The notes under the pieces: model-generated
What the model saw: the letters and a program-made list of their open reading frames with translations, nothing else
What the model was told of the DNA's origin: nothing
Database searches by the model: none
Shown: piece after piece, positions 1-47,074 of the stretch
Layout of the letters: each line of letters begins with the position of its first letter
How positions within the stretch are numbered: the stretch's first letter is position 1
Assembly (NCBI GenBank): GCA_029953675.1
Contig: JAMWBK010000003.1
Span: 2,790,001-2,854,000 of the forward strand
DNA: 64,000 bases
Reading direction: 5' to 3'
Source: Rhodosorus marinus CCMP1338
Lineage: Eukaryota > Plantae > Rhodophyta
Position numbers and translations under genes: made by a program

Positions 1-1750
1 TGAGCTGGCGAACCTCAACCTGGCTCAAACTCAAGGACTCTTTCAAAGGCTCGATCTCATGGTCTTGGTTGACAACCTGAGGCGCGGGTGTACTTTTCAC
101 TTGATCGCGGTGGTGCGACTCCTTTTCTCTCCGGGTTCCTTTTGGAAAGCGCTTGGTAGCATGGTTTCCCGGTCGTCCTTCTCCGTACGCAGGTCCTTGA
201 GCAGGTCCATGTCCTTTGTAGTGGTCAGACGGCTTCTCTTTTCCATGACGTTTGGTTGCAGCTGACTCCTTGGTTTCCGTTCCAGCTTGCGCCCTTTCAG
301 CTGACTTCTCATCCCTTTTCTGCCATCTTTCCTCCTTCCTCGACGAGCCGTCCTCCCTTCGAACATGACTATCTCTTCTCCCAGGAGCATCCTCCCTCCT
401 CGACGATTTATTTTCCTTTCTAACCGCAGTTTCCTCTCGCTTCTGACTGGAAACTTCCTTTTTAAGAGGAGGCTCCTCCCTCCTGGCCAGATGCTCTTCC
501 TTTCTCACAGCACCAGCGTAACTCTCATCCTTTTTCACAAATACCCCTTCCTTTTTGCCTTGAGTATCGCCCCGTTTAGGATGAAACTGGGCGTCCTCCT
601 TCCTTGCTGCTGGAGTATGCTGTGAAGACGGTTGCTGCGAAGTCGATGAGCTCGATGTTTGTTGCGCTGGCTGTGGTGGCTGTGCATGTGGTCTCTGGGC
701 ATGCTGTGGTTGTGCCTGTGGTCTTTGTACTTGTAGCTGCTGCGCCTTCGGTTGTTGCGCCTGCGGTTGCTGCACCTGCGTTGGTTTGGCCTGAGTTGGT
801 TTTCCCTGCGTTGGTTTTGCTTGCGTTGGTTTTGCTTGCGTTGGTTTTGCTTGCGTTGGTTTTGCTTGTGTTGATTTTGCCTGCGTTGTCTTTTCTGTCG
901 ATGGCTGCTGCTGCGGTGGCTGCTGTTGCGGCGGTGGCTGCTGTTGCGATGGCTGCCGTGTCGGTGGCTGCTGTGGCGGTGGCTGCTGTGGCGGTGGCTG
1001 CTGTGGCGGTGGCTGCTGTTGCGGCGGTGGCTGCTGTGGTGGTGGCTGCTGTTGCGGTGGCTGCTGTGGCGGTGGCTGCTGTTGCGGTGGCTGCTGTTGC
1101 GGTGGCTGCTGTTGCGGTGGCTGCTGTTGCGGTGGCTGCTGTTGCGGTGGCTGCTGTTGCGGTGGCGGCTGTTGCGGTGGCGGCTGTTGCGGTGGCGGCT
1201 GTTGCGGTGGCTGCTGTTGCGGTGGCGGCTGTTGCGGTGGCTGCTGTTGCGGTGGCGGCTGTTGCGGTGGCGGCTGTTGCGGTGGCTGCTGTTGCGGTGG
1301 CGGCTGTTGCTGTGCCGGCCGATGCGGTGGCTGCTGTTGCTGCGCCGGCTGTTGCTGCGCCGGCTGTTGCTGCGCCGGCTGTTGCTGTACCTGCGGTGGA
1401 AGTACTTGCGCTTGCTGCACCTGATGTGCCATCTGCGCTTGGTGTGCCAGCTGCGCCAGCCTTGCTTGCCTTAGCTGCTCATGTTGCTGCATTTGCTGCA
1501 GTTGTTGCAGATGTTGCGGATGTTGCAGATGCGCAGCAAATTGAGGAGGATACGGCATGTGCTGCGGCTGTAGCGGATACTGCATTTCTGGCACTGGCAT
1601 TTGGGCCTGCGGTGGTGCCCGGAGCGCAGGAACCCCCGGATCCTCGGGGGCTACGGGCTTCTTCGGTATTGGCCTCCATTCCTCGGCACCGGCCCTTCCA
1701 GCAAACTTCGAATGCCCCTTTTGAGATTTTCTTGCATCCGACTCCGTCAT
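1..1750 (-). CDS. Uncharacterised low-complexity P/Q-rich protein; 3' end lies beyond the left window edge
   Basis: ATG at 1750 (MTESDARKSQKGHSKF...). The minus-strand frame was open in the segments I translated by hand down to position 1: (PPQQQ/PPPQQ)n, (QAKPT)n, a charged K/E/R region, then a coiled-coil-like ending EIEPLKESLSLSQVEVRQL. It is absent from the ORF track, probably because there is no stop inside the window. Confidence 0.8.
   Translation of the reverse strand, partial: MTESDARKSQKGHSKFAGRAGAEEWRPIPKKPVAPEDPGVPALRAPPQAQMPVPEMQYPLQPQHMPYPPQFAAHLQHPQHLQQLQQMQQHEQLRQARLAQLAHQAQMAHQVQQAQVLPPQVQQQPAQQQPAQQQPAQQQQPPHRPAQQQPPPQQQPPQQPPPQQPPPQQQPPQQPPPQQQPPQQPPPQQPPPQQPPPQQQPPQQQPPQQQPPQQQPPQQQPPQQQPPPQQPPQQQPPPQQPPPQQQPPPQQPPPQQPPPQQPPTRQPSQQQPPPQQQPPQQQPSTEKTTQAKSTQAKPTQAKPTQAKPTQAKPTQGKPTQAKPTQVQQPQAQQPKAQQLQVQRPQAQPQHAQRPHAQPPQPAQQTSSSSTSQQPSSQHTPAARKEDAQFHPKRGDTQGKKEGVFVKKDESYAGAVRKEEHLARREEPPLKKEVSSQKREETAVRKENKSSRREDAPGRRDSHVRREDGSSRKEERWQKRDEKSAERAQAGTETKESAATKRHGKEKPSDHYKGHGPAQGPAYGEGRPGNHATKRFPKGTRREKESHHRDQVKSTPAPQVVNQDHEIEPLKESLSLSQVEVRQL
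770..1395 (-). repeat. Coding 15-bp minisatellites (QAKPT units, then PPQQQ/PPPQQ units)
   Basis: The + strand shows (GCGTTGGTTTTGCTT)n at about 770-890 and (GCTGCTGTTGCGGTG)n at about 905-1390. Both are in frame with the minus-strand ORF. Confidence 0.9.
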
Positions 1751-30826: not shown

Positions 30827-32403
30827 CTATTCACCAGAACCGTCGGCCAAAGGCGCAGGGAAAGTAGTTCCTACAACATTCGACGCTCTCCCGACTCCCG
30901 GGGACATTAAAGTAGGTGAAGCCAGTAAACCACCAGGAGACATGAATGGTGACGGTGAGAAAACTCCCAAACCTCTTCCAGGCGATATCGGGGGCAATCC
31001 GGTCGGCGTCTGCATGTTCCAACCGGAGAAGGCACCTAATGCACTACCAGTCAACCCACCCCCGCCGCCAGGCATTCCAGGCGTGGTCCCTGTACCATAG
31101 CCAGGATGAAACGGACTTGGCACCCCAGTGACAACCATTGGAGACATTGCGGTGAATCTATCGGAAACCTTCGCCTTGCTCGGGTTGCTTCGCTTAACGG
31201 CGGCTTCGGCGAAACGAATTTCCTTGCGTTTCGCTGAGCCCACATCCGCTCGATCGGCATGTTTTGAATCCTCATCATCAACATAAAAGTCGCCGAGATC
31301 AAGCTCCAGCGATCTGATATGTTCGTTCAGGTCGGCACCACTCATGAGCGCTTGCTGTTCCTTCTCGTCCATCTGGTCCAGTTGCGAAACTGTCGGCAGT
31401 GTCTGCGCACAGAGCAAAAAGATGGAGGGTATAAGGTTAGACAAAGCTGACAAGGACCTACATCGGCGCCGCAATGTACTGCATCCGAACAACCGCTTAC
31501 CGCGCTTGCATCTCTCGTAAGATCAGCAAAGTTGACTTGCTTGGCTAGAAGCTCCCTCTTCACGTCGTTTTGGTCCACGGCTGGGCGAGTACCATTGGTG
31601 CTCCAGTCGCTCTCTACAGGCATCCCCATCCTCTGCGTTGGTTCCTCAACCGATCCCATGGACTCCATGAAGCGGTACGCGCTCTCATTATGTTGATCAT
31701 TCGAACACCCTTGATCCCCTCTATGAACGGCTCCACCAGCCGCGTATCCCGGACCCGCAGTTTGCTTCCTCTCTCCCGACAGGAATCTCGCAAGGTCCTG
31801 GGCTTGACTTGCCTGCTGTTGTTTGGTTGCCTCGTCCTTCCCCATCCAAGGTTGGGGTTTTCCTGCGGGGGGGTAAGCTTGCGGTCGTCCTTGAACGGCA
31901 GGCGCCGTCTGTTGTTGTGTGTTGCCTATGATTTGATCGAAAGAATACTGCTGATTCTGAGGCATCCTTTGTGCCTGCATTCCATCGTTGCGCATGTTCA
32001 TCGCTCCCTGACCCTGTTGGTACGCCGTCCGTACGGAAGGACTGTTCAAGTACGCGAGGATGTTTGAATACGACGCCGGATTTGCAGGTTCACTGCTAAC
32101 ACTTGCAGCGCCACCGTTAGTTGTCTGGGTCCTACTAGCCGGAGCATCTCCTCCGCTGATTTGCTGTTGGCTCGCTAGACCCTTATGCGCAGCAAGATGG
32201 GAGATCCACGATGACCTCCACATGAACGTCTTACCGCAATCGGCATAGTTGCACTTGAAAGGTTTCTCCCCGGTATGCATTCGAATGTGCGCCTTCAGAT
32301 TATAGTTTTTCCCAAAGTCCTTGTTGCACCCCTCGAAATGACAAGCATATCGCTTTTTCCCTTTGCGAGGGGCAACGGCCTGCTTGCTGATCCTCCCCTC
32401 CAT
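30827..32403 (-). CDS. C2H2 zinc-finger transcription factor (two fingers)
   Basis: YACHFEGCNKDFGKNYNLKAHIRMHTGEKPFKCNYADCGKTFMWRSSWISHLAAH, a Q-rich middle, an intron at 31403-31500 (GTAAGC...GCAG) and an S/P/G-rich tail. An additional upstream exon cannot be excluded. Confidence 0.88.
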
Positions 32404-34656
32404 TTCCTTCCAAGAAAACAACTCCTCGACCCGCCTCTTAAATGAGTCCCTCCCACCCACCTACCTAATCCACGTACAACACGGAGAAATCTTCTCTCCT
32501 CTTCCCCCTTCACAATCCACTCCCACCTTCTGCACTTCTTCTCGACTTAACTGTACCTGAATTTGACGATTCCAGGGCAACCATTGCTCATATGCCCATC
32601 ACGCTACCCTTAAAATACCAACACTTTTGTGTTCGTCACTCCCAGCTCCCTCAATCCCAGCCGGGCAAAACTGTCCACAGCAACCCAACGATGAAACAAA
32701 CACTGATACTCGATAAAACACCGAATACTAACAAAACTCTCTACCTTAAAACATGTCCAAAATCCCTAAACCACTCCAAAAAAACCCCACTCCGCCCCCC
32801 CCCTCCCGCCCACCTTTCCTCAATACCACAACCTCTTAACAACCAAACATCTACAGCGCCCACCTCCTATGACTACACAACTTTTTATCCAAAAAATACA
32901 AAACAACCAACACCACCATCTCCGGCCCCGGCCCGCCCCCTCTCCGGTTCTGGTTTTTTTTTTTTCACTCAACACAGACGCTCTCCTCGGCAGATCTCCA
33001 TCGAGCACAAAACGCTTTCCTTAAGTTAACCCTCTTTCGAATGAAACCCACCACTCCTAATCATCCCCCAAGACCCTTTTACTTCAAAACCTTCAAGACT
33101 GACCGTTCTCTCACGTGCATCTCTCTAGCGAAAGCCAAAGCCCACTCTACACTTCATGAAACCCCCAAAACGTACAAAACTCCCGCAACACCTTCCGCCT
33201 TTCTTCCCCCCCTTCCATCACATAACTCCTTTCCAACAAGAAAAACCAAAAAAAACCATTGACTTCTTTTATTCTCCCCAGCCCCCCTCCCGCCCGCCCA
33301 CCCCCCCCTCCTCTTTGACTCTCCACCTTCTAATCCTAAGAAAACCATTTCTTCAGATTATCAACCCCCTTTCTTAAAAAACAACAAAACTAAACCGCAA
33401 GTACAAACTATGTACTATATAGTTCTTAGTTTTGCTCAATATACTTAAAATTAGAATCTAATTATTTTATAGTTTATTGTGGTAGGAAATACCTACCCCT
33501 TCTGTTTTTTTAAATCATATATTATTAATAATATAGAAAAGAAAGGGGTAGGGCAAATTGGCATGCGTTTAAGATAAAGTCTTTTATATTGCCCCGAAAC
33601 GGACAGAATATGATCGAATTGAAATATTGTTATTACGAAGCCCATTTAGATTTTTATACCGGGGGTTTGGGAGCGGGAAATATGGGGAATGCAGACTTTT
33701 TTGCTTTAGAGTTATGGACAGCTGTTTATGGAGTGCTAAAATTACCCCCTTGGTTTTTTAAAGAATATTCTAGGTGGACAAGGAGCAAAAAGAACATTGT
33801 GCTTTTTCGTAGTAAGAAAAATTAAGAAAAAGTCAATCCGTTTTTTCTTCTTCCGTCATCTCACCTTATTTTTTTTCTTTAAGATATAATCTACATCGGT
33901 TTCCCGGGAAAAAGGCGGTAAGAAAAAGAAAATCCGGGAATTTCTGGTACGAACAAAATACCCACGCTCTCCCCTTCCCTCGTAACTCCCTTCGGCTTTC
34001 CCGCCCCCCCCCCTGATTAATTTCTTTGACTGAGCTATAAGAGAGGTATAATTTCAAGAAGATTACGTACTCGTTCAAGAAATATTAGATAAAGACTTTT
34101 TTGACCGTTAAGGACAAGAGTTGGAATGGGGTAGATTTTTTATTTGTTGTTCGTTGAGGTTGAAGGGAGAAGGGAACGGGGGGTTACTACTAACTTCATT
34201 GTATAAGTCACGGGTTCTATTTTTAACAGAAAAAGGAAGCTTCTCATGTATATCTTCAAGATTTCAGCTAAAACAGGAAAACGAGCAAACGGAAAATGTG
34301 CTCACGAAAAGGGTCAACCCCCTTCTATGGGAAAATATTTTGTACAAGAAAATAACCGTCCACTATCGAATGCAGCGTATGTTTCTGGGGTTGTCTATCA
34401 GGTCATCCTCTATAACACAACAACACGTACCCCCCTCTATCTACTATGGCTATTATTTGAAACATTAAGAATTCATTTTAATAGGTTTAAAAAAGGGGTA
34501 TCCAATCGTAAACGCGGTAACGTCATCTACAGGGGTATGAAGAGAAGAAAATATATGGTCTAGACAGAACGTAGCATCATTTCTATCGTATATTTGTAGT
34601 GTTTTATTATTGTTTTCTTGTAGTACTGCGTTTTTCCTGGGGCTTCAAGGAACCTA

Positions 34657-42389: not shown

Positions 42390-42878
42390 ATGGTTTATTA
42401 CAAGGATTGGGATAGATTTTATGAGGCTTCACTTCGCATGTTCATAAAGGCTCCTGAGAAGGTAAGTTGTAGAATTTTTTTTTTCCGTTTGCGGGTTTTG
42501 AGGTTTTGTGAAGGTGGACTGATGGCGTTCTTGTTCGCCGTTCTTTCTGATTTCTTTGTGTTGAAAAGACTCGTTATTCTTTCAAGTATCGCGGAGTAAG
42601 GAAAATACTTGTTTTGACAGTCACGAACAGTAGCAAGGTGGGGTATTTTCTTTGAAAAAATCTTCGGGACGTTCGCCGACGAGTTTTTCAGTTTCGCTGA
42701 GTGTTTCATCTTCCGTCTGAACCCCCAGGTGCTCAAGTTTCGCACAGACCAGAGAGCGGACATCAGGAAGATGGAGAGGTTGACAGAATGGATGCTTTTG
42801 AGAATGACATCGCCGCTGACCAAAGAGGAGATCCAAACAGAGTTCGCTTCGTTGCTGGAAGGAGAAGCCGCGAACTAG
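42390..42878 (+). CDS. SRP9: Signal recognition particle 9 kDa protein
   Basis: Exons 42390-42461, 42569-42637 and 42729-42878 give MVYYKDWDRFYEASLRMFIKAPEK-TRYSFKYRGVRKILVLTVTNSSK-VLKFRTDQRADIRKMERL, a close match to the SRP9 pattern. Confidence 0.93.
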
Positions 42879-43265: not shown

Positions 43266-45831
43266 CTACACAATATTCTGAACCTGTTCTCTGATTCTCT
43301 CAATTTGCTCCTTGATCATCACGCAGAGCTGACTAACAGCAGCATCGCTTGCCTTTGATGAAATCGTGGACACCTCCCTGTTCATCTCTTGTACAAGGAA
43401 ATTGAGCTTCTGTCCAATCTGTTTCGTAGAAAAGAAGCTCAGCTCAAAGACGGAGATATGAGATTTCAGCCGTACGAGCTCCTCAGAAACATCAACACGC
43501 CCTCCCATGAGCTGCTCAGATACGGATGATAAATTAACATCCTTCGCTATAGAAATGTTCTCGCTCAGCTCGGCCGCCAGGTTTCTCGCGTTCGCCTTCT
43601 CCCGTTCTACAATATCAGGCAACCTGAGTTCGATCTGTTCAACCCGCCATTCGAGGGGCATAGATCCAGATCCTCTGTTAGCGTGGCTGCGCCGAGTTTC
43701 TTCCCTGGAAGAAAACTGAAATCCGTACCTCTTCACAAATCTCCAGAATTGCTTTGCTCCTCCTCAGCAAGTCAAGCTGAAGCGCGTATCCTTCACGGCG
43801 CCGGGAAAGCTTCAGATCGTTCACAGCCGCCCGCACCACCTTTTCAACGAGCGTATACACACCATCGCTATTCGTCGGAGCACAACGTCGTGGAGAGAAC
43901 GTAAGCTCATGTTCGTGAGGGAAGAACCCCAAGCAACCGGGAATTAATTCTCCTTTACGCAGACTTACTCTACGTTACCGTTCTCCTTCTTCACGAAAAC
44001 TTCAGAAAACCTTAGAATCTGGTCCAGTGTCGGTGTGACATCAAGTTCAGAAGCTTTCACCACATCCTCGATAAGGTGCTTCGCTGCTCGCACAGCGTCT
44101 GCATCAACTCGAATGGGAAGTACGAGCATCTCCGAATCCTTACCATCGGAACGGAGAACAAGAAAAACAGATATGAAGTTCTTAGCATGAGTATCGACGG
44201 AGTAGTATCAAATTTGTATAGAGCTTGTTGAACCACGAGGTACCAGCGAGTGGGCTGAGGTGCTGGCATTGGTTTGTAATGCGCATACGCTGGAATGCGT
44301 ATTGCCTGAAGCCGGTGCGCTTGGAAGTCGTTAAAGTAGGTCCAACGAGCCTTACCTTAACCTCTATAGTAACCATCACCTTCCCTCGAAGTAGTTCTTG
44401 TCGAAGATGAGCCGAGATCTCACGTTCATGGGCGGCCAAGTATCTCGGGGATTTCACCTTGTGATTAAGATAAGAAGGCGGCTCGTGTGAGCCCACACGA
44501 ATCCGCTGTTGATGCGCGAAAGGGGAATGCTCTCGCGGGCTTACCGAAAGATCAAAATGCCTCGAGTTGATTGTTCGGATTTCTACCTTGACGCTCAAAC
44601 TTCCTGAGGTTTGCATTGCCGTACCGAAACCAGTCATGCTAGACGCGCCGACTGCGGTCGGGAGGTCACTGGGTAGTTCGTCGTTGATATCGTTCAGATC
44701 ATCGCCTGACCCAGCCCTCTCCTCCCGCTCACGCAGCAACAGAAGTCCTCGAGGTGAATATTGTAGAAGCTCTAGTGCTTGTCGATGAAGGTCAGCCGAT
44801 ACTGCTGCAAGTACAGTCCCATCCGATTCCAATCCCAGCTGCTCGCCTTTTGAAGTTACAAAAACAGCGGAGAAGATAATACGCGTCAACTTCTTAAACT
44901 AGATTCAACGTCCATTACGACGACTGTCGTTTAGACGAATCTTCCAGGCTGAGGCCGAAGTTTCTAATTCACACAGCTCGCGCTCGGTGTTCTGTGTTTT
45001 TCGTTATGCTTTTTGGGTTTCTCATGCTGGAGAGATCGTACCTCTCCAATCTGTAATAACGCCTCCCGCTTCTTCTATGACGGGAACCAGAGCTGTATAA
45101 TCCCAGGGTTTCATATCCGCTTCGCAGATGATATGGACGTGTCCCATAGCCAGGAGGGCGTAGGCGTAGCAATCGCTTCCGAAGTTGGTATATTTACAAG
45201 CCGCTTGAAGTTCTTCGAAAGCCATACGTTCGATGCCAGTAAACATTTCGGGTGTTGTCGCGTGCAAATTTGCTGCTGATAGTTTCGTCGGGACATCTTC
45301 AGGGATCTTGACAGGTTTTCCGTTCAGCGTAGAGCCTCTTCCATGTACACCAATCCATCTTTCACCGGAAATGGGCTGATCGATGATTCCTAAGACAGTT
45401 TTAGGTCCATTCATCAATCCAATGAGGGTCCCGAAGGTTGGCTTCCCCGTTATGAAGGCTTTCGTTCCATCGATTGGATCCAGAACCCACGTGTAATCCG
45501 ATCCGGTAGACGACTCGCTCGTGCCAAATTCCTCCCCAACCACGTGATCATCGGGCGCTTTGTTCTTTAAGATCGTCCTCATCGCGTCCTCCGCGCCCTT
45601 GTCCGCGACCGTGACTGGACTCTGATCGGACTTGAAATCTGTGGAGACACCACCAACCCTCCTGAAATACGGTCTGATTGCATTCCCAGCAGCATCTGCC
45701 AGCTCCTTCCCAAGAACCACATAATCGTCGGGAACTAAATCTACGCACATAGCCAGCCGGTGACACTTTCGGCTTCTCAACATCTTTCTACATCCTGGAA
45801 CCGGTACATTCCAAACAAACCCCATGTCCAT
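43266..45831 (-). CDS. hisN-yicC: Plastid-targeted fusion: histidinol-phosphate phosphatase (HisN/IMPL2) + YicC/YloC-family endoribonuclease
   Basis: Exons 45831-45042, 44846-44545, 44457-44356, 44138-43969, 43867-43729 and 43634-43266 (1872 nt, 623 aa, all GT-AG). HisN part: DQSPVTVAD, GEEFG, WVLDPIDGTKAF, GSDCYAY, MKPWD and ITDWRG|EQLGLESDGTVLAAVSADLHRQALELL. YicC part: SMTGFG, VEIRTINSRHFD, RGKV, RRREG, DVSEELVRL, KLNFLVQEMNREVSTISSK and IREQVQNI. Confidence 0.87.
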
Positions 45832-47074
45832 ACGATTCTTACCGATACATAGAATCTAAAAACATATTGCAAACTATGTCCATTACTCCTCCTTCCTAGG
45901 ACCAAACCAAACCCATAGCCTCTGCCAACCCACAACCAGTCCTCCTCAAAAAAAACCTAAACTGAGATCGTCGATCAACTAAATCCCAAACCCCTTGTTT
46001 TTACTGGCGTTTTTAATGTTTATTCCCAAGCGGATTCTCAAACCGTTGTTCTCGTTATCAATTTCAATGTTTCTAATGGATTTATCATGACATGCTCAAA
46101 ACCGCAGTTGTGGTCAATTTCGATGCTTATAATGGATTTATCATCCTACTCTCAAAACCGATGTTTTCATATTGTTTTAGCGGGCTCGCTTGTCGTTCTA
46201 TGTTTGAGTTTCTAGTATCATATTCGCAATATATTCCTAATAGATCAGGGATTGGGATCCACACCAACAAGTGGTGATTTTGATATCATTTTCAATGTTT
46301 ATTTTTCAAACGGGATTGAGATGATTAGGTTAGATTTCCACCGGTTGAGTGGATGCGTATGGAAAAGGAGTTGACTGCTAGGAAGGTTTACGTGACTAGT
46401 TTGCCATGTTGTTTGTCGCCGGTGGAACTCATACCTGAGCAGTTCAAAGAAGGTCGAGGAATGATGTCGTCATATCGATTCCACCAATGACAGAGGCGTC
46501 GTTTTATTCACAGGTCCCACGCGATAGGGTGGGTGCATCCGTCATGGTGCGGAGGTGGACTACCTCGGATGGGACTCAACAAGACTTCATCCAGGAAGGG
46601 CTTTCAACCTCGATATCGTGATGTATCAAAATAATCGGGTTAGATGAAGGGAGCATTCGGGAGTTCTAGTTCACATGGCGCTTCGGGGCTTTCATTTCCT
46701 GCTCTTCATAACGGAACAAACTCAGCCCCGGACCACCTTGACATCGTACATAAAAAAAAAGGGAGCTAGTTTTGCTGGCTTTGTAACGAGCCCGCCCAGT
46801 CAGTAGAACTCGTCAGAAGAAGACCATTGCTAGGTTGGGGGCCGAGCAGAATCTCGACATTCAGGTCGAACGCCTTTCTGTTCCACGCAAAGTACAGCGC
46901 CAAAGTTAAATTACACATTCAGCACAGCCGTCACCAGCACATTATAAGACCCTCCTCCATTGCGCTCTTATTTCTCAATGACGTCCCCTTGGAACTAATC
47001 AGCGAGGATTCTGGGCACTACGTTGCCTTTTCACAGGACTTCCAAGAACTTACAGCGGCTTCTCGGCTCTTTGG

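What the first reader, a model, noticed from the sequence alone, without database searches (positions are those of the whole stretch)
43266..45831. HisN fused in frame to a full-length YicC/YloC endoribonuclease in a spliced, apparently plastid-targeted gene
Seen in sequence: the HisN ORF appears to stop at WRGTISPA, but a GTACGA...TGTAACTTCAAAAG intron (44847-45041) splices WRG to EQLGLESDGTVLAAVSADLHRQALELL, the expected HisN/IMPase C-terminal strand and helix. With no stop, this frame continues through a ~37-aa linker into SMTGFG and a ~290-aa YicC domain that retains DVSEE and REQ. Established: HisN catalyses the histidinol-phosphate dephosphorylation step of His synthesis (plastidial in plants), and YicC/YloC are oligomeric bacterial endoribonucleases. 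Inference: a bacterial-derived RNase has been domesticated (four introns within the YicC part) and uses HisN's transit peptide (MDMGFV...). The product could be a bifunctional plastid enzyme linking His synthesis to RNA turnover, or a polyprotein cleaved after import. I know of no description of this fusion.
Basis: partly seen in the sequence, partly recalled or inferred. Interest (0 to 1): 0.88.

Follow-up and report, generated by a model that had tools for sequence, protein, structure and literature searches.

The report
Red-algal HisN–YicC fusion gene
A red alga's nuclear gene really does join a histidine-synthesis phosphatase to a bacterial-type RNA-cutting enzyme in one spliced mRNA, and the join is ancient across red algae, sits in sequence databases, but was not found described in the literature searched.

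Summary
On the minus strand, 45831-43266, six exons and five GT-AG introns encode a 623-aa protein. It has an HisN domain (TIGR02067 above cutoff), a 36-aa disordered linker and a full YicC/YloC domain (PF03755 plus PF08340). Exon 2 alone carries the HisN C-terminus, the linker and the YicC start, so the fusion is not made by joining exons. The window is Rhodosorus marinus (JAMWBK010000003.1). The gene is already deposited as NDN08_003595 / UniProt A0AAV8UWZ0. MMETSP and JGI transcripts from another strain and another species confirm all five junctions and a single mRNA. The same architecture occurs in Florideophyceae, Bangiophyceae, Cyanidiophyceae and Stylonematophyceae. In Porphyridium and Erythrolobus the YicC part is still fused but has lost its catalytic residues. 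In Rhodosorus all 11 residues shown by mutagenesis to matter for E. coli YicC activity are kept, and dN/dS is 0.05-0.10 in every part compared. YicC is reported absent from Cyanobacteriota. The nearest bacterial relatives found are FCB-group bacteria, which suggests a non-cyanobacterial horizontal transfer. Plastid targeting (N-terminal Phe motif), dual activity and whether the protein stays intact are inferred, not shown. I found no paper describing the fusion or any eukaryotic YicC.

The parts
43266..45831 (-). Whole coding region of the HisN-YicC fusion gene: 6 exons, 5 introns, 623 aa from Met1. The start conserved between strains is Met3 at 45825. The NCBI model NDN08_003595 starts at Met17, at 45783.
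45832..45914 (-). 5' UTR, at least this long; the transcript contigs of another strain reach here.
   Evidence: L083 aligns from 45911, L084 from 45914
45042..45831 (-). Exon 1: N-terminal extension plus HisN residues up to W-R-G (first base of codon 264).
45724..45831 (-). N-terminal extension (residues 1-36, MDMGFVWNVPVPGCRKMLRSRKCHRLAMCVDLVPDD). It has a Phe near the start and is net basic, which makes it a candidate red-algal plastid transit peptide.
   Evidence: the F-based motif is described in PMC7038456; dN/dS 0.19
44758..45723 (-). HisN (IMPase-type histidinol-phosphatase) domain, residues 37-293, interrupted by intron 1.
44847..45041 (-). Intron 1 (195 nt, GTACGA...AAAAG). If retained it truncates HisN at ...WRGTISPA*.
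   Evidence: (P0127 keeps it)
44545..44846 (-). Exon 2: a single exon that carries the HisN C-terminal strand and helix, the whole linker and the first 34 residues of YicC.
44647..44757 (-). Linker, residues 294-330 (SPRGLLLLREREERAGSGDDLNDINDELPSDLPTAVG). It is acidic, predicted disordered, and varies from about 10 to about 130 aa among orthologues.
   Evidence: pLDDT 43-48; dN/dS 0.06
43269..44646 (-). YicC/YloC-type endoribonuclease domain, residues 331-623, interrupted by introns 2-5. It keeps M334, N357, R359, R547, E552, E553, F580, R587, E588, R616 and E617, which correspond to E. coli M5, N28, R30, R211, E216, E217, F244, R251, E252, R280 and E281.
44458..44544 (-). Intron 2 (87 nt, in frame, with no stop codon).
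44356..44457 (-). Exon 3.
44139..44355 (-). Intron 3 (217 nt).
43969..44138 (-). Exon 4.
43868..43968 (-). Intron 4 (101 nt), retained in transcript isoform P0122.
43729..43867 (-). Exon 5.
43635..43728 (-). Intron 5 (94 nt), retained in isoforms P0124 and P0126 (contig L083).
43266..43634 (-). Exon 6 with the DUF1732 catalytic region (DVSEE, QEMNRE, IREQVQNIV) and the stop codon.
42390..42878 (+). Convergent downstream neighbour, an SRP9-21 gene. The same neighbour lies on the transcript contig of the 61%-identical relative. It is context, not part of the fusion.

Best explanation
Shown: this is one nuclear gene of the red alga Rhodosorus marinus. It is transcribed and spliced into a single mRNA that encodes a two-domain protein of about 69 kDa. 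The N-terminal domain is an IMPase-fold histidinol-phosphate phosphatase (HisN, the plant IMPL2/HPP type). The C-terminal domain is a complete YicC/YloC-type endoribonuclease. A variable, disordered, acidic linker joins them. The fusion predates the split of the main red-algal classes and is under purifying selection in every part compared. Inferred: the YicC module entered the red-algal lineage by horizontal transfer from a non-cyanobacterial bacterium; the nearest relatives found are FCB-group. It became expressed and targeted by fusing in frame behind HisN, so it shares HisN's promoter and its Phe-type plastid transit peptide. In the plastid the HisN domain would carry out the penultimate step of histidine synthesis. 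The YicC domain would oligomerise, by analogy with the bacterial hexamers, into a clamshell Mg2+/Mn2+-dependent endonuclease acting on structured plastid RNAs. The two activities would be chemically independent. In Porphyridiophyceae the RNase chemistry has decayed but the fused module is kept, which hints at an added structural role.
For: Gene model and domains. One exon spans the domain boundary. Transcripts: the complete 621-aa MMETSP ORF P0123 matches the six-exon model; cDNA contig L083 from another strain aligns in blocks that match exons 1-5; and the 2432-nt transcript contig L082 of a 61%-identical species carries the fused ORF without introns. Nuclear context on a 3.35-Mb contig, with PRA1, SRP9-21 and DEAD-helicase neighbours. 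The three-domain architecture occurs in Chondrus, Gracilaria, Hildenbrandia, Pyropia, four Galdieria species and Rhodosorus. An exhaustive scan of 1.84 billion cluster representatives returns only about a dozen fused clusters before the HisN-only hits begin, and every named one is Rhodophyta. All residues whose alanine mutants lose or alter E. coli YicC activity (PMC10793500) are kept, and the HisN metal motifs are invariant. dN/dS is 0.047 for HisN, 0.063 for the linker and 0.098 for YicC. The AlphaFold model has mean pLDDT 82.9 with a disordered linker. Its domains match MtHPP (TM 0.90-0.93) and E. coli YicC 8ver (TM 0.86). YicC is absent from annotated Cyanobacteriota genomes (bioRxiv 10.64898/2026.05.21.726821). 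The closest bacterial sequences are Rhodothermales, Bacteroidota, Ignavibacteriota and Chlorobiota at 34-39% identity. None of 80 bacterial yicC loci has an IMPase gene within 3 kb. N-terminally SUMO-tagged YicC is active in vitro (PMC11417398). Phe lies in positions 2-8 of 14 of 26 orthologue N-termini, against 20% expected.
Against: No protein-level data exist: size in vivo, localisation, oligomeric state and both enzyme activities are untested. TIGR00255 scores just under its cutoff (165.7 against 167.5). The N-terminal extension is short (about 35 aa) and poor in Ser and Thr, and no targeting predictor could be run. The NJ tree is weak: red-algal monophyly has about 50% bootstrap support, one long-branch bacterium intrudes, and the bacterial sample was chosen by similarity and capped. 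The donor is therefore not resolved. Loss of the catalytic residues in Porphyridium, Erythrolobus, P0025 and P0027 shows that the RNase activity is dispensable in some lineages.
Confidence: 0.75

Rival explanations
1. Polyprotein. The fusion serves only for co-expression and co-import, and the disordered linker is cut after import, releasing a normal HisN and a free YicC.
For: The linker is disordered and highly variable in length and sequence. The bacterial enzymes work as stand-alone proteins.
Against: No conserved cleavage motif appears in the linker across classes. The Galdieria linker is only about 10 residues. The linker codons are under purifying selection between strains (dN/dS 0.06, but only 37 codons). 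Tagged YicC is active, so cleavage is not required.
Confidence: 0.15
2. The YicC module is mainly a non-catalytic oligomerisation or RNA-binding scaffold for HisN, even in Rhodosorus.
For: Porphyridium, Erythrolobus, P0025 and P0027 keep a C-terminal extension of 230-260 aa that is still homologous to YicC-N (hhalign probability 91%; Pfam 1e-10 to 1e-12) but lacks the catalytic Glu and Arg residues.
Against: Rhodosorus and most other lineages keep every residue required for catalysis and RNA binding. This part has dN/dS 0.098.
Confidence: 0.08
3. Artefact: two adjacent genes merged by assembly or gene prediction, or bacterial contamination.
For: None beyond the unusual architecture. Retained-intron-1 transcripts (P0127) would give a truncated HisN-only product.
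Against: One exon spans the junction. Independent transcript assemblies exist from two strains and a second species. The architecture is conserved in four or five red-algal classes. The YicC part contains spliceosomal introns, and the flanking genes are eukaryotic.
Confidence: 0.01
4. The protein is not plastidial but cytosolic or mitochondrial, so the RNase acts on other RNAs.
For: The presequence is short, basic and poor in Ser and Thr. Several orthologue models lack the Phe motif. No predictor or experiment was available.
Against: Phe near the N-terminus is enriched among orthologues (14 of 26, binomial tail 1.4e-4) and fits the rhodophyte F-based plastid signal (PMC7038456). The plant orthologue IMPL2 carries the database name 'chloroplastic'.
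Confidence: 0.12

Closest known systems
Plant histidinol-phosphate phosphatase (Arabidopsis IMPL2/HISN7; Medicago truncatula MtHPP, PDB 5eq7-5eqa)
   Same: About 45-50% identity. The alignment is co-linear to the very last residue of MtHPP. The GEE, DPIDGT and WD metal motifs are the same. Predicted fold TM is 0.90-0.93. TIGR02067 scores above its cutoff.
   Different: The plant enzymes end at ...LQW. Here the chain continues for 330 more residues into a YicC domain. The presequence is of the red-algal Phe type rather than the green type.
Bacterial YicC/YloC endoribonucleases (E. coli YicC, PDB 8ver/8ves/8hvj; B. subtilis YloC; C. difficile CD25890)
   Same: Both Pfam halves are present over full length. 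About 23% identity to E. coli and 34-39% to FCB-group homologues. All mutationally defined essential residues are kept. Predicted fold TM is 0.86.
   Different: The gene is eukaryotic, nuclear and interrupted by introns. The domain is fused at its N-terminus to a metabolic enzyme. The papers read treat the family as bacterial and none mentions a eukaryotic member. Oligomeric state and activity are unknown here.
HisN-aminotransferase fusions in other eukaryotic transcriptomes (P0083, P0101, P0112, P0119, P0120)
   Same: The same HisN module sits at the N-terminus, with a second enzyme attached to its C-terminus.
   Different: There the partner is a class I/II aminotransferase (PF00155), the family that includes HisC, the preceding pathway step. 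That makes it a classic same-pathway fusion. In red algae the partner is an RNase with no known link to histidine.
E. coli SuhB (an IMPase-fold protein that also acts in rRNA antitermination complexes)
   Same: It is an IMPase-fold protein associated with RNA metabolism. It appears among the structural matches.
   Different: Only about 25% identical. The red-algal domain is an HisN orthologue, not SuhB, and its RNA link comes from a fused RNase. Nothing tested here shows an RNA role for the IMPase fold itself.

Membership tests
HisN, IMPase-type histidinol-phosphatase (TIGR02067) | Equivalog HMM score above the curated cutoff over the full profile | tested here: met
   279.6 bits against 275.15; profile positions 4-252 of 252
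HisN, IMPase-type histidinol-phosphatase (TIGR02067) | IMPase metal-binding motifs (GEE, DPIDGT, WD) | tested here: met
   E100, E101, D118, I120, D121, G122, T123, W243 and D244 are present, and invariant in 30 of 31 fused orthologues
HisN, IMPase-type histidinol-phosphatase (TIGR02067) | Complete IMPase fold including the C-terminal strand and helix | tested here: met
   Aligns to MtHPP through its last residue only after intron 1 is spliced. Foldseek TM 0.90-0.93
HisN, IMPase-type histidinol-phosphatase (TIGR02067) | Hydrolysis of L-histidinol phosphate | not testable with these tools
   Needs an enzyme assay or complementation
YicC/YloC endoribonuclease family | PF03755 (N) plus PF08340 (C, DUF1732) above their gathering scores | tested here: met
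   107.4 and 102.4 bits against cutoffs of 25 and 27
YicC/YloC endoribonuclease family | TIGR00255 full-length model above its cutoff | tested here: not met
   165.7 bits against 167.5: a near miss by 1.8 bits, with profile positions 4-290 of 291 covered
YicC/YloC endoribonuclease family | Residues needed for catalysis and RNA binding in E. coli YicC (M5, N28, R30, R211, E216, E217, F244, R251, E252, R280, E281) | tested here: met
   All 11 are conserved
YicC/YloC endoribonuclease family | YicC protomer fold | tested here: met
   Foldseek match to 8ver_B: E 4.9e-19, TM 0.86 over 291 columns
YicC/YloC endoribonuclease family | Hexamer (dimer of trimers) and metal-dependent endonuclease activity leaving a 3'-OH | not testable with these tools
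   Known for the bacterial enzymes; no data for the fusion
YicC/YloC endoribonuclease family | Stand-alone bacterial protein of about 290 aa | tested here: not met
   Eukaryotic nuclear gene with introns, fused to HisN
Red-algal nuclear-encoded plastid proteins | N-terminal presequence with a Phe-based motif at the very N-terminus | tested here: inconclusive
   MGFVW... from the conserved Met3. 14 of 26 orthologues have Phe in positions 2-8. The motif is described in PMC7038456. No predictor was run
Red-algal nuclear-encoded plastid proteins | Import into the plastid | not testable with these tools
   Needs localisation or proteomics
Genuine gene fusion (single transcript, single ORF) | Continuous ORF across the junction in mature mRNA, and conservation in relatives | tested here: met

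The most novel reading that the evidence does not exclude
The two halves are functionally coupled, not just co-delivered. HisN dimerisation and YicC hexamerisation would build one higher-order plastid particle. In it, occupancy of the HisN site, or histidine-pathway status more generally, would gate the clamshell RNase, or the RNase would control plastid transcripts in response to amino-acid supply. This would be the first eukaryotic or organellar YicC RNase and a direct physical link between amino-acid synthesis and RNA decay.
Probability: 0.1. Interest if true: 0.8.

Novelty: new variant of a known kind. Interest (0 to 1): 0.55.

Why it matters
The YicC/YloC papers I could read treat these RNases as bacterial, and none mentions a eukaryotic member. 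This gene shows that an entire eukaryotic phylum has kept one, apparently catalytically intact, since before its main classes diverged. It probably works inside the plastid, whose cyanobacterial ancestor is reported to lack the family. That adds a candidate player to red-algal plastid RNA metabolism. It is also a clear case of a horizontally acquired gene gaining expression and targeting by fusing to a resident enzyme. Lineages with an intact RNase half and lineages with a decayed one offer a natural experiment. Finally, the 'histidinol-phosphatase' or 'IMPL2' labels on these proteins hide half of the protein.

Tried and rejected
1. Inheritance of the fusion from a bacterial hisN-yicC operon: rejected. 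None of 80 bacterial yicC loci has an IMPase-like gene within 3 kb.
2. Cyanobacterial (endosymbiotic) origin of YicC: unlikely. The family is reported absent from Cyanobacteriota. The single 'Synechococcus' MAG hit (L073) sits next to a Bacteroidota sequence in the tree and is probably a binning error.
3. The phosphatase domain trimming RNase product ends: unsupported. YloC leaves a 3'-OH and presumably a 5'-phosphate.
4. P0135 as a stand-alone eukaryote-like YicC: rejected. It is a fused gene cut off by the contig end.
5. L063, which groups with Galdieria in the NJ tree: it is an ordinary bacterial contig, so this is probably long-branch attraction.
6. Donor resolution by NJ bootstrap: failed. 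Red-algal monophyly has about 50% support, and the sister group is FCB-only in 35% of replicates.
8. tRNA and Rfam scans of the window found nothing.
9. Literature searches for YicC with red alga, algae or chloroplast, for DUF1732, and for histidinol-phosphate phosphatase with red algae found nothing relevant. The hits for YicC with algae or chloroplast look like chance matches on 'YIC...' word starts.
10. PMC4859000 (the MtHPP structure paper) is not held, so its specificity residues were not checked.
Full report
**What is in the sequence.** On the minus strand an ORF starts at 45831 and stops at 45022 with ...DWRGTISPA*. A GT-AG intron (45041-44847, 195 nt) joins W-R-G to EQLGLESDGTVLAAVSADLHRQALELLQY. 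Four more GT-AG introns follow (87, 217, 101 and 94 nt). Together the six exons give a 1872-nt CDS: 45831-45042, 44846-44545, 44457-44356, 44138-43969, 43867-43729 and 43634-43266. It encodes 623 aa. Exon 2 alone carries the end of HisN, the whole linker and the first 34 residues of YicC. The fusion therefore does not depend on any splice choice.

**Domains.**
- Pfam finds Inositol_P at residues 42-288 (7.5e-53), YicC-like_N at 332-485 (1.2e-30) and YicC-like_C at 505-622 (2.3e-29).
- NCBIfam's HisN equivalog TIGR02067 scores 279.6 bits, above its cutoff of 275.15, and is covered to its last position.
- The YicC model TIGR00255 is covered at positions 4-290 of 291 but scores 165.7 bits, against a cutoff of 167.5.
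- The best solved relatives are Medicago histidinol-phosphate phosphatase (1.3e-68), which aligns to its very last residue at query residue 293, and E. coli YicC (about 1e-20).
- An AlphaFold model of the deposited protein has mean pLDDT 82.9. It shows two confident domains and a linker with pLDDT 43-48.
- Foldseek matches the model to MtHPP (TM 0.90-0.93) and to YicC 8ver (TM 0.86).

**Identity of the locus.** The window is Rhodosorus marinus (Stylonematophyceae), assembly GCA_029953675.1, contig JAMWBK010000003.1 of 3.35 Mb. The gene is already deposited as NDN08_003595 (KAJ8907113.1, UniProt A0AAV8UWZ0). That record is 607 aa, starts at Met17 and uses exactly my splice pattern. The neighbours are ordinary nuclear genes: PRA1 upstream, a convergent SRP9-21 downstream, then a DEAD-box helicase.

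**Transcript evidence.**
- MMETSP transcripts of another R. marinus strain include a complete 621-aa ORF (P0123). It reproduces all five junctions and starts at MGFVW.
- A 1709-nt JGI transcript contig of that strain (L083, about 91% nucleotide identity) aligns to the window in blocks ending and starting at my exon 1-5 boundaries.
- A 2432-nt transcript contig from a 61%-identical relative (L082) carries the fused ORF without introns, and has the same convergent SRP9 neighbour.
- Isoforms that retain intron 1 (P0127), intron 4 (P0122) or intron 5 (P0124, P0126) also exist.
- No transcript starting at the YicC part was seen.
- In the other strain the first in-frame ATG corresponds to Met3 (45825).

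**Conservation and constraint.** The three-domain architecture is found in:
- Florideophyceae: Chondrus, Gracilaria, Hildenbrandia;
- Bangiophyceae: Pyropia;
- Cyanidiophyceae: four Galdieria species;
- Stylonematophyceae: Rhodosorus and one relative;
- many unnamed contigs.

An exhaustive HMMER scan of 1.84 billion cluster representatives lists only about a dozen fused clusters before the HisN-only proteins begin. Every named one is a red alga.

Mutagenesis of E. coli YicC identified M5, N28, R30, E216, E217, F244, R251, E252, R280 and E281 as required for activity, and R211 as affecting cleavage-site choice (PMC10793500). All eleven are conserved in Rhodosorus and in most orthologues.

Porphyridium, Erythrolobus and two unnamed sequences (P0025, P0027) keep a homologous C-terminal extension: hhalign probability 91% for Porphyridium, and Pfam YicC-N at 1e-10 to 1e-12 for P0025 and P0027. 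They have lost these residues, while their HisN motifs stay intact.

Between the two Rhodosorus strains, dN/dS is 0.047 for HisN, 0.063 for the linker and 0.098 for the first 171 codons of YicC.

**Origin of the RNase half.** A recent survey reports YicC in 71 of 81 bacterial phyla but absent from annotated Cyanobacteriota genomes (bioRxiv 10.64898/2026.05.21.726821). The best named bacterial hits are Rhodothermales, Bacteroidota, Ignavibacteriota and Chlorobiota, at 34-39% identity. A neighbour-joining tree nests the red-algal sequences within that group. Support is weak, however: red-algal monophyly has about 50% bootstrap, and the bacterial sample was similarity-biased and capped. No IMPase-like gene lies within 3 kb of yicC in 80 bacterial loci, so the fusion arose in the algal lineage. 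I conclude that a non-cyanobacterial horizontal transfer is likely and that the donor is unresolved.

**How it most likely works.**
- Shown: one mRNA, one ORF, two intact-looking catalytic domains and a flexible linker.
- Inferred, targeting: the N-terminus from Met3 (MGFVWNVPVP..., 6 K+R, 3 D+E) fits the Phe-based plastid signal of rhodophytes (PMC7038456). Phe lies in positions 2-8 of 14 of 26 orthologue N-termini, against 20% expected. These sequences are not independent of one another.
- Inferred, activities: HisN would dephosphorylate histidinol phosphate. The YicC half would oligomerise and cleave structured RNA with Mg2+ or Mn2+, as the bacterial enzymes do.
- An N-terminal fusion need not block activity, since SUMO-tagged YicC was the active form used in published assays.
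- YloC leaves a 3'-OH, so the phosphatase is not needed to process RNA ends. The two chemistries look independent.
- The simplest reason for the fusion is that the acquired RNase borrowed HisN's promoter and presequence. Its retention after catalytic decay in Porphyridiophyceae hints at an extra structural role.
- Still open: cleavage into two proteins after import, a scaffold-only role, a non-plastid location, and real regulatory coupling.

**Novelty.** Full-text searches found no description of this fusion or of any eukaryotic YicC. They covered YicC with red alga, algae or chloroplast, DUF1732, and histidinol-phosphate phosphatase with red algae. None of the YicC/YloC papers I searched mentions eukaryotes. 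The protein records themselves are public and carry automatic Pfam hits, but are named only 'histidinol-phosphatase', 'IMPL2' or 'hypothetical protein'. I rate this a new variant of known kinds. It is real, ancient and moderately surprising, and its biochemistry is untested.

Noticed in passing
P0083, P0101, P0112, P0119, P0120 (one search hits; not in the window): In other eukaryotic transcriptomes (MMETSP/EukProt, organisms not named) the same HisN module is fused at its C-terminus to a class I/II aminotransferase (PF00155). That is the family of HisC, the preceding pathway step, so the HisN C-terminus has accepted a fusion partner at least twice.
   Followed up: partly
P0259 (657 aa, Logan contig): A divergent fused copy has lost the HisN metal-binding residues (GEE to ME; DPIDGT to EPLESP; WD to WR). 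Several YicC residues are also changed (N28P, F244I, R280Q). It may be a decaying or neofunctionalised paralogue in an unidentified red alga.
   Followed up: partly
window 45783-45831: The deposited NCBI model starts at Met17 and so drops the MGFVW... N-terminus that carries the Phe motif. Transcripts of another strain support Met3 (45825) as the first conserved ATG.
   Followed up: yes
window 46058-46165: Two tandem copies of a 52-nt repeat with 56-nt spacing (81% identical) lie about 230-330 nt upstream of the start codon, in the presumed promoter region. A looser 29-nt repeat pair lies at 45996-46024 and 46275-46303.
   Followed up: no
window 44458-44544; isoforms P0122, P0124-P0127: Intron 2 is 87 nt, in frame and free of stop codons. 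Transcript assemblies of the other strain include retained-intron forms: intron 1 gives a truncated HisN-only ORF, and introns 4 or 5 give a truncated YicC. One form (P0125) has an odd 3' junction that removes the catalytic REQVQNIV end.
   Followed up: partly
L073 (CALRIY020000002.1, 'Synechococcus sp. UW140' MAG): A MAG labelled Synechococcus carries a yicC gene that is almost identical in the tree to a Bacteroidota sequence (L029). YicC is reported absent from Cyanobacteriota, so this contig is probably mis-binned.
   Followed up: partly
window 672-1531: A long 15-nt (five-codon) tandem array, about 32 copies at 902-1385 plus related arrays, lies inside a 407-aa ORF (604-1827). It explains the extreme AT skew (-0.44) and 57% GC of the first 2 kb.
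   Followed up: no
window 32001-34000: Strong negative GC skew (-0.35) with no tandem repeat detected. The cause was not examined.
   Followed up: no
window 42390-42878 and L082 1990-2310: The convergent SRP9-21 neighbour is conserved next to the fusion gene in a species only 61% identical. The two genes assemble into a single transcript contig there, so their 3' ends may overlap.
   Followed up: partly
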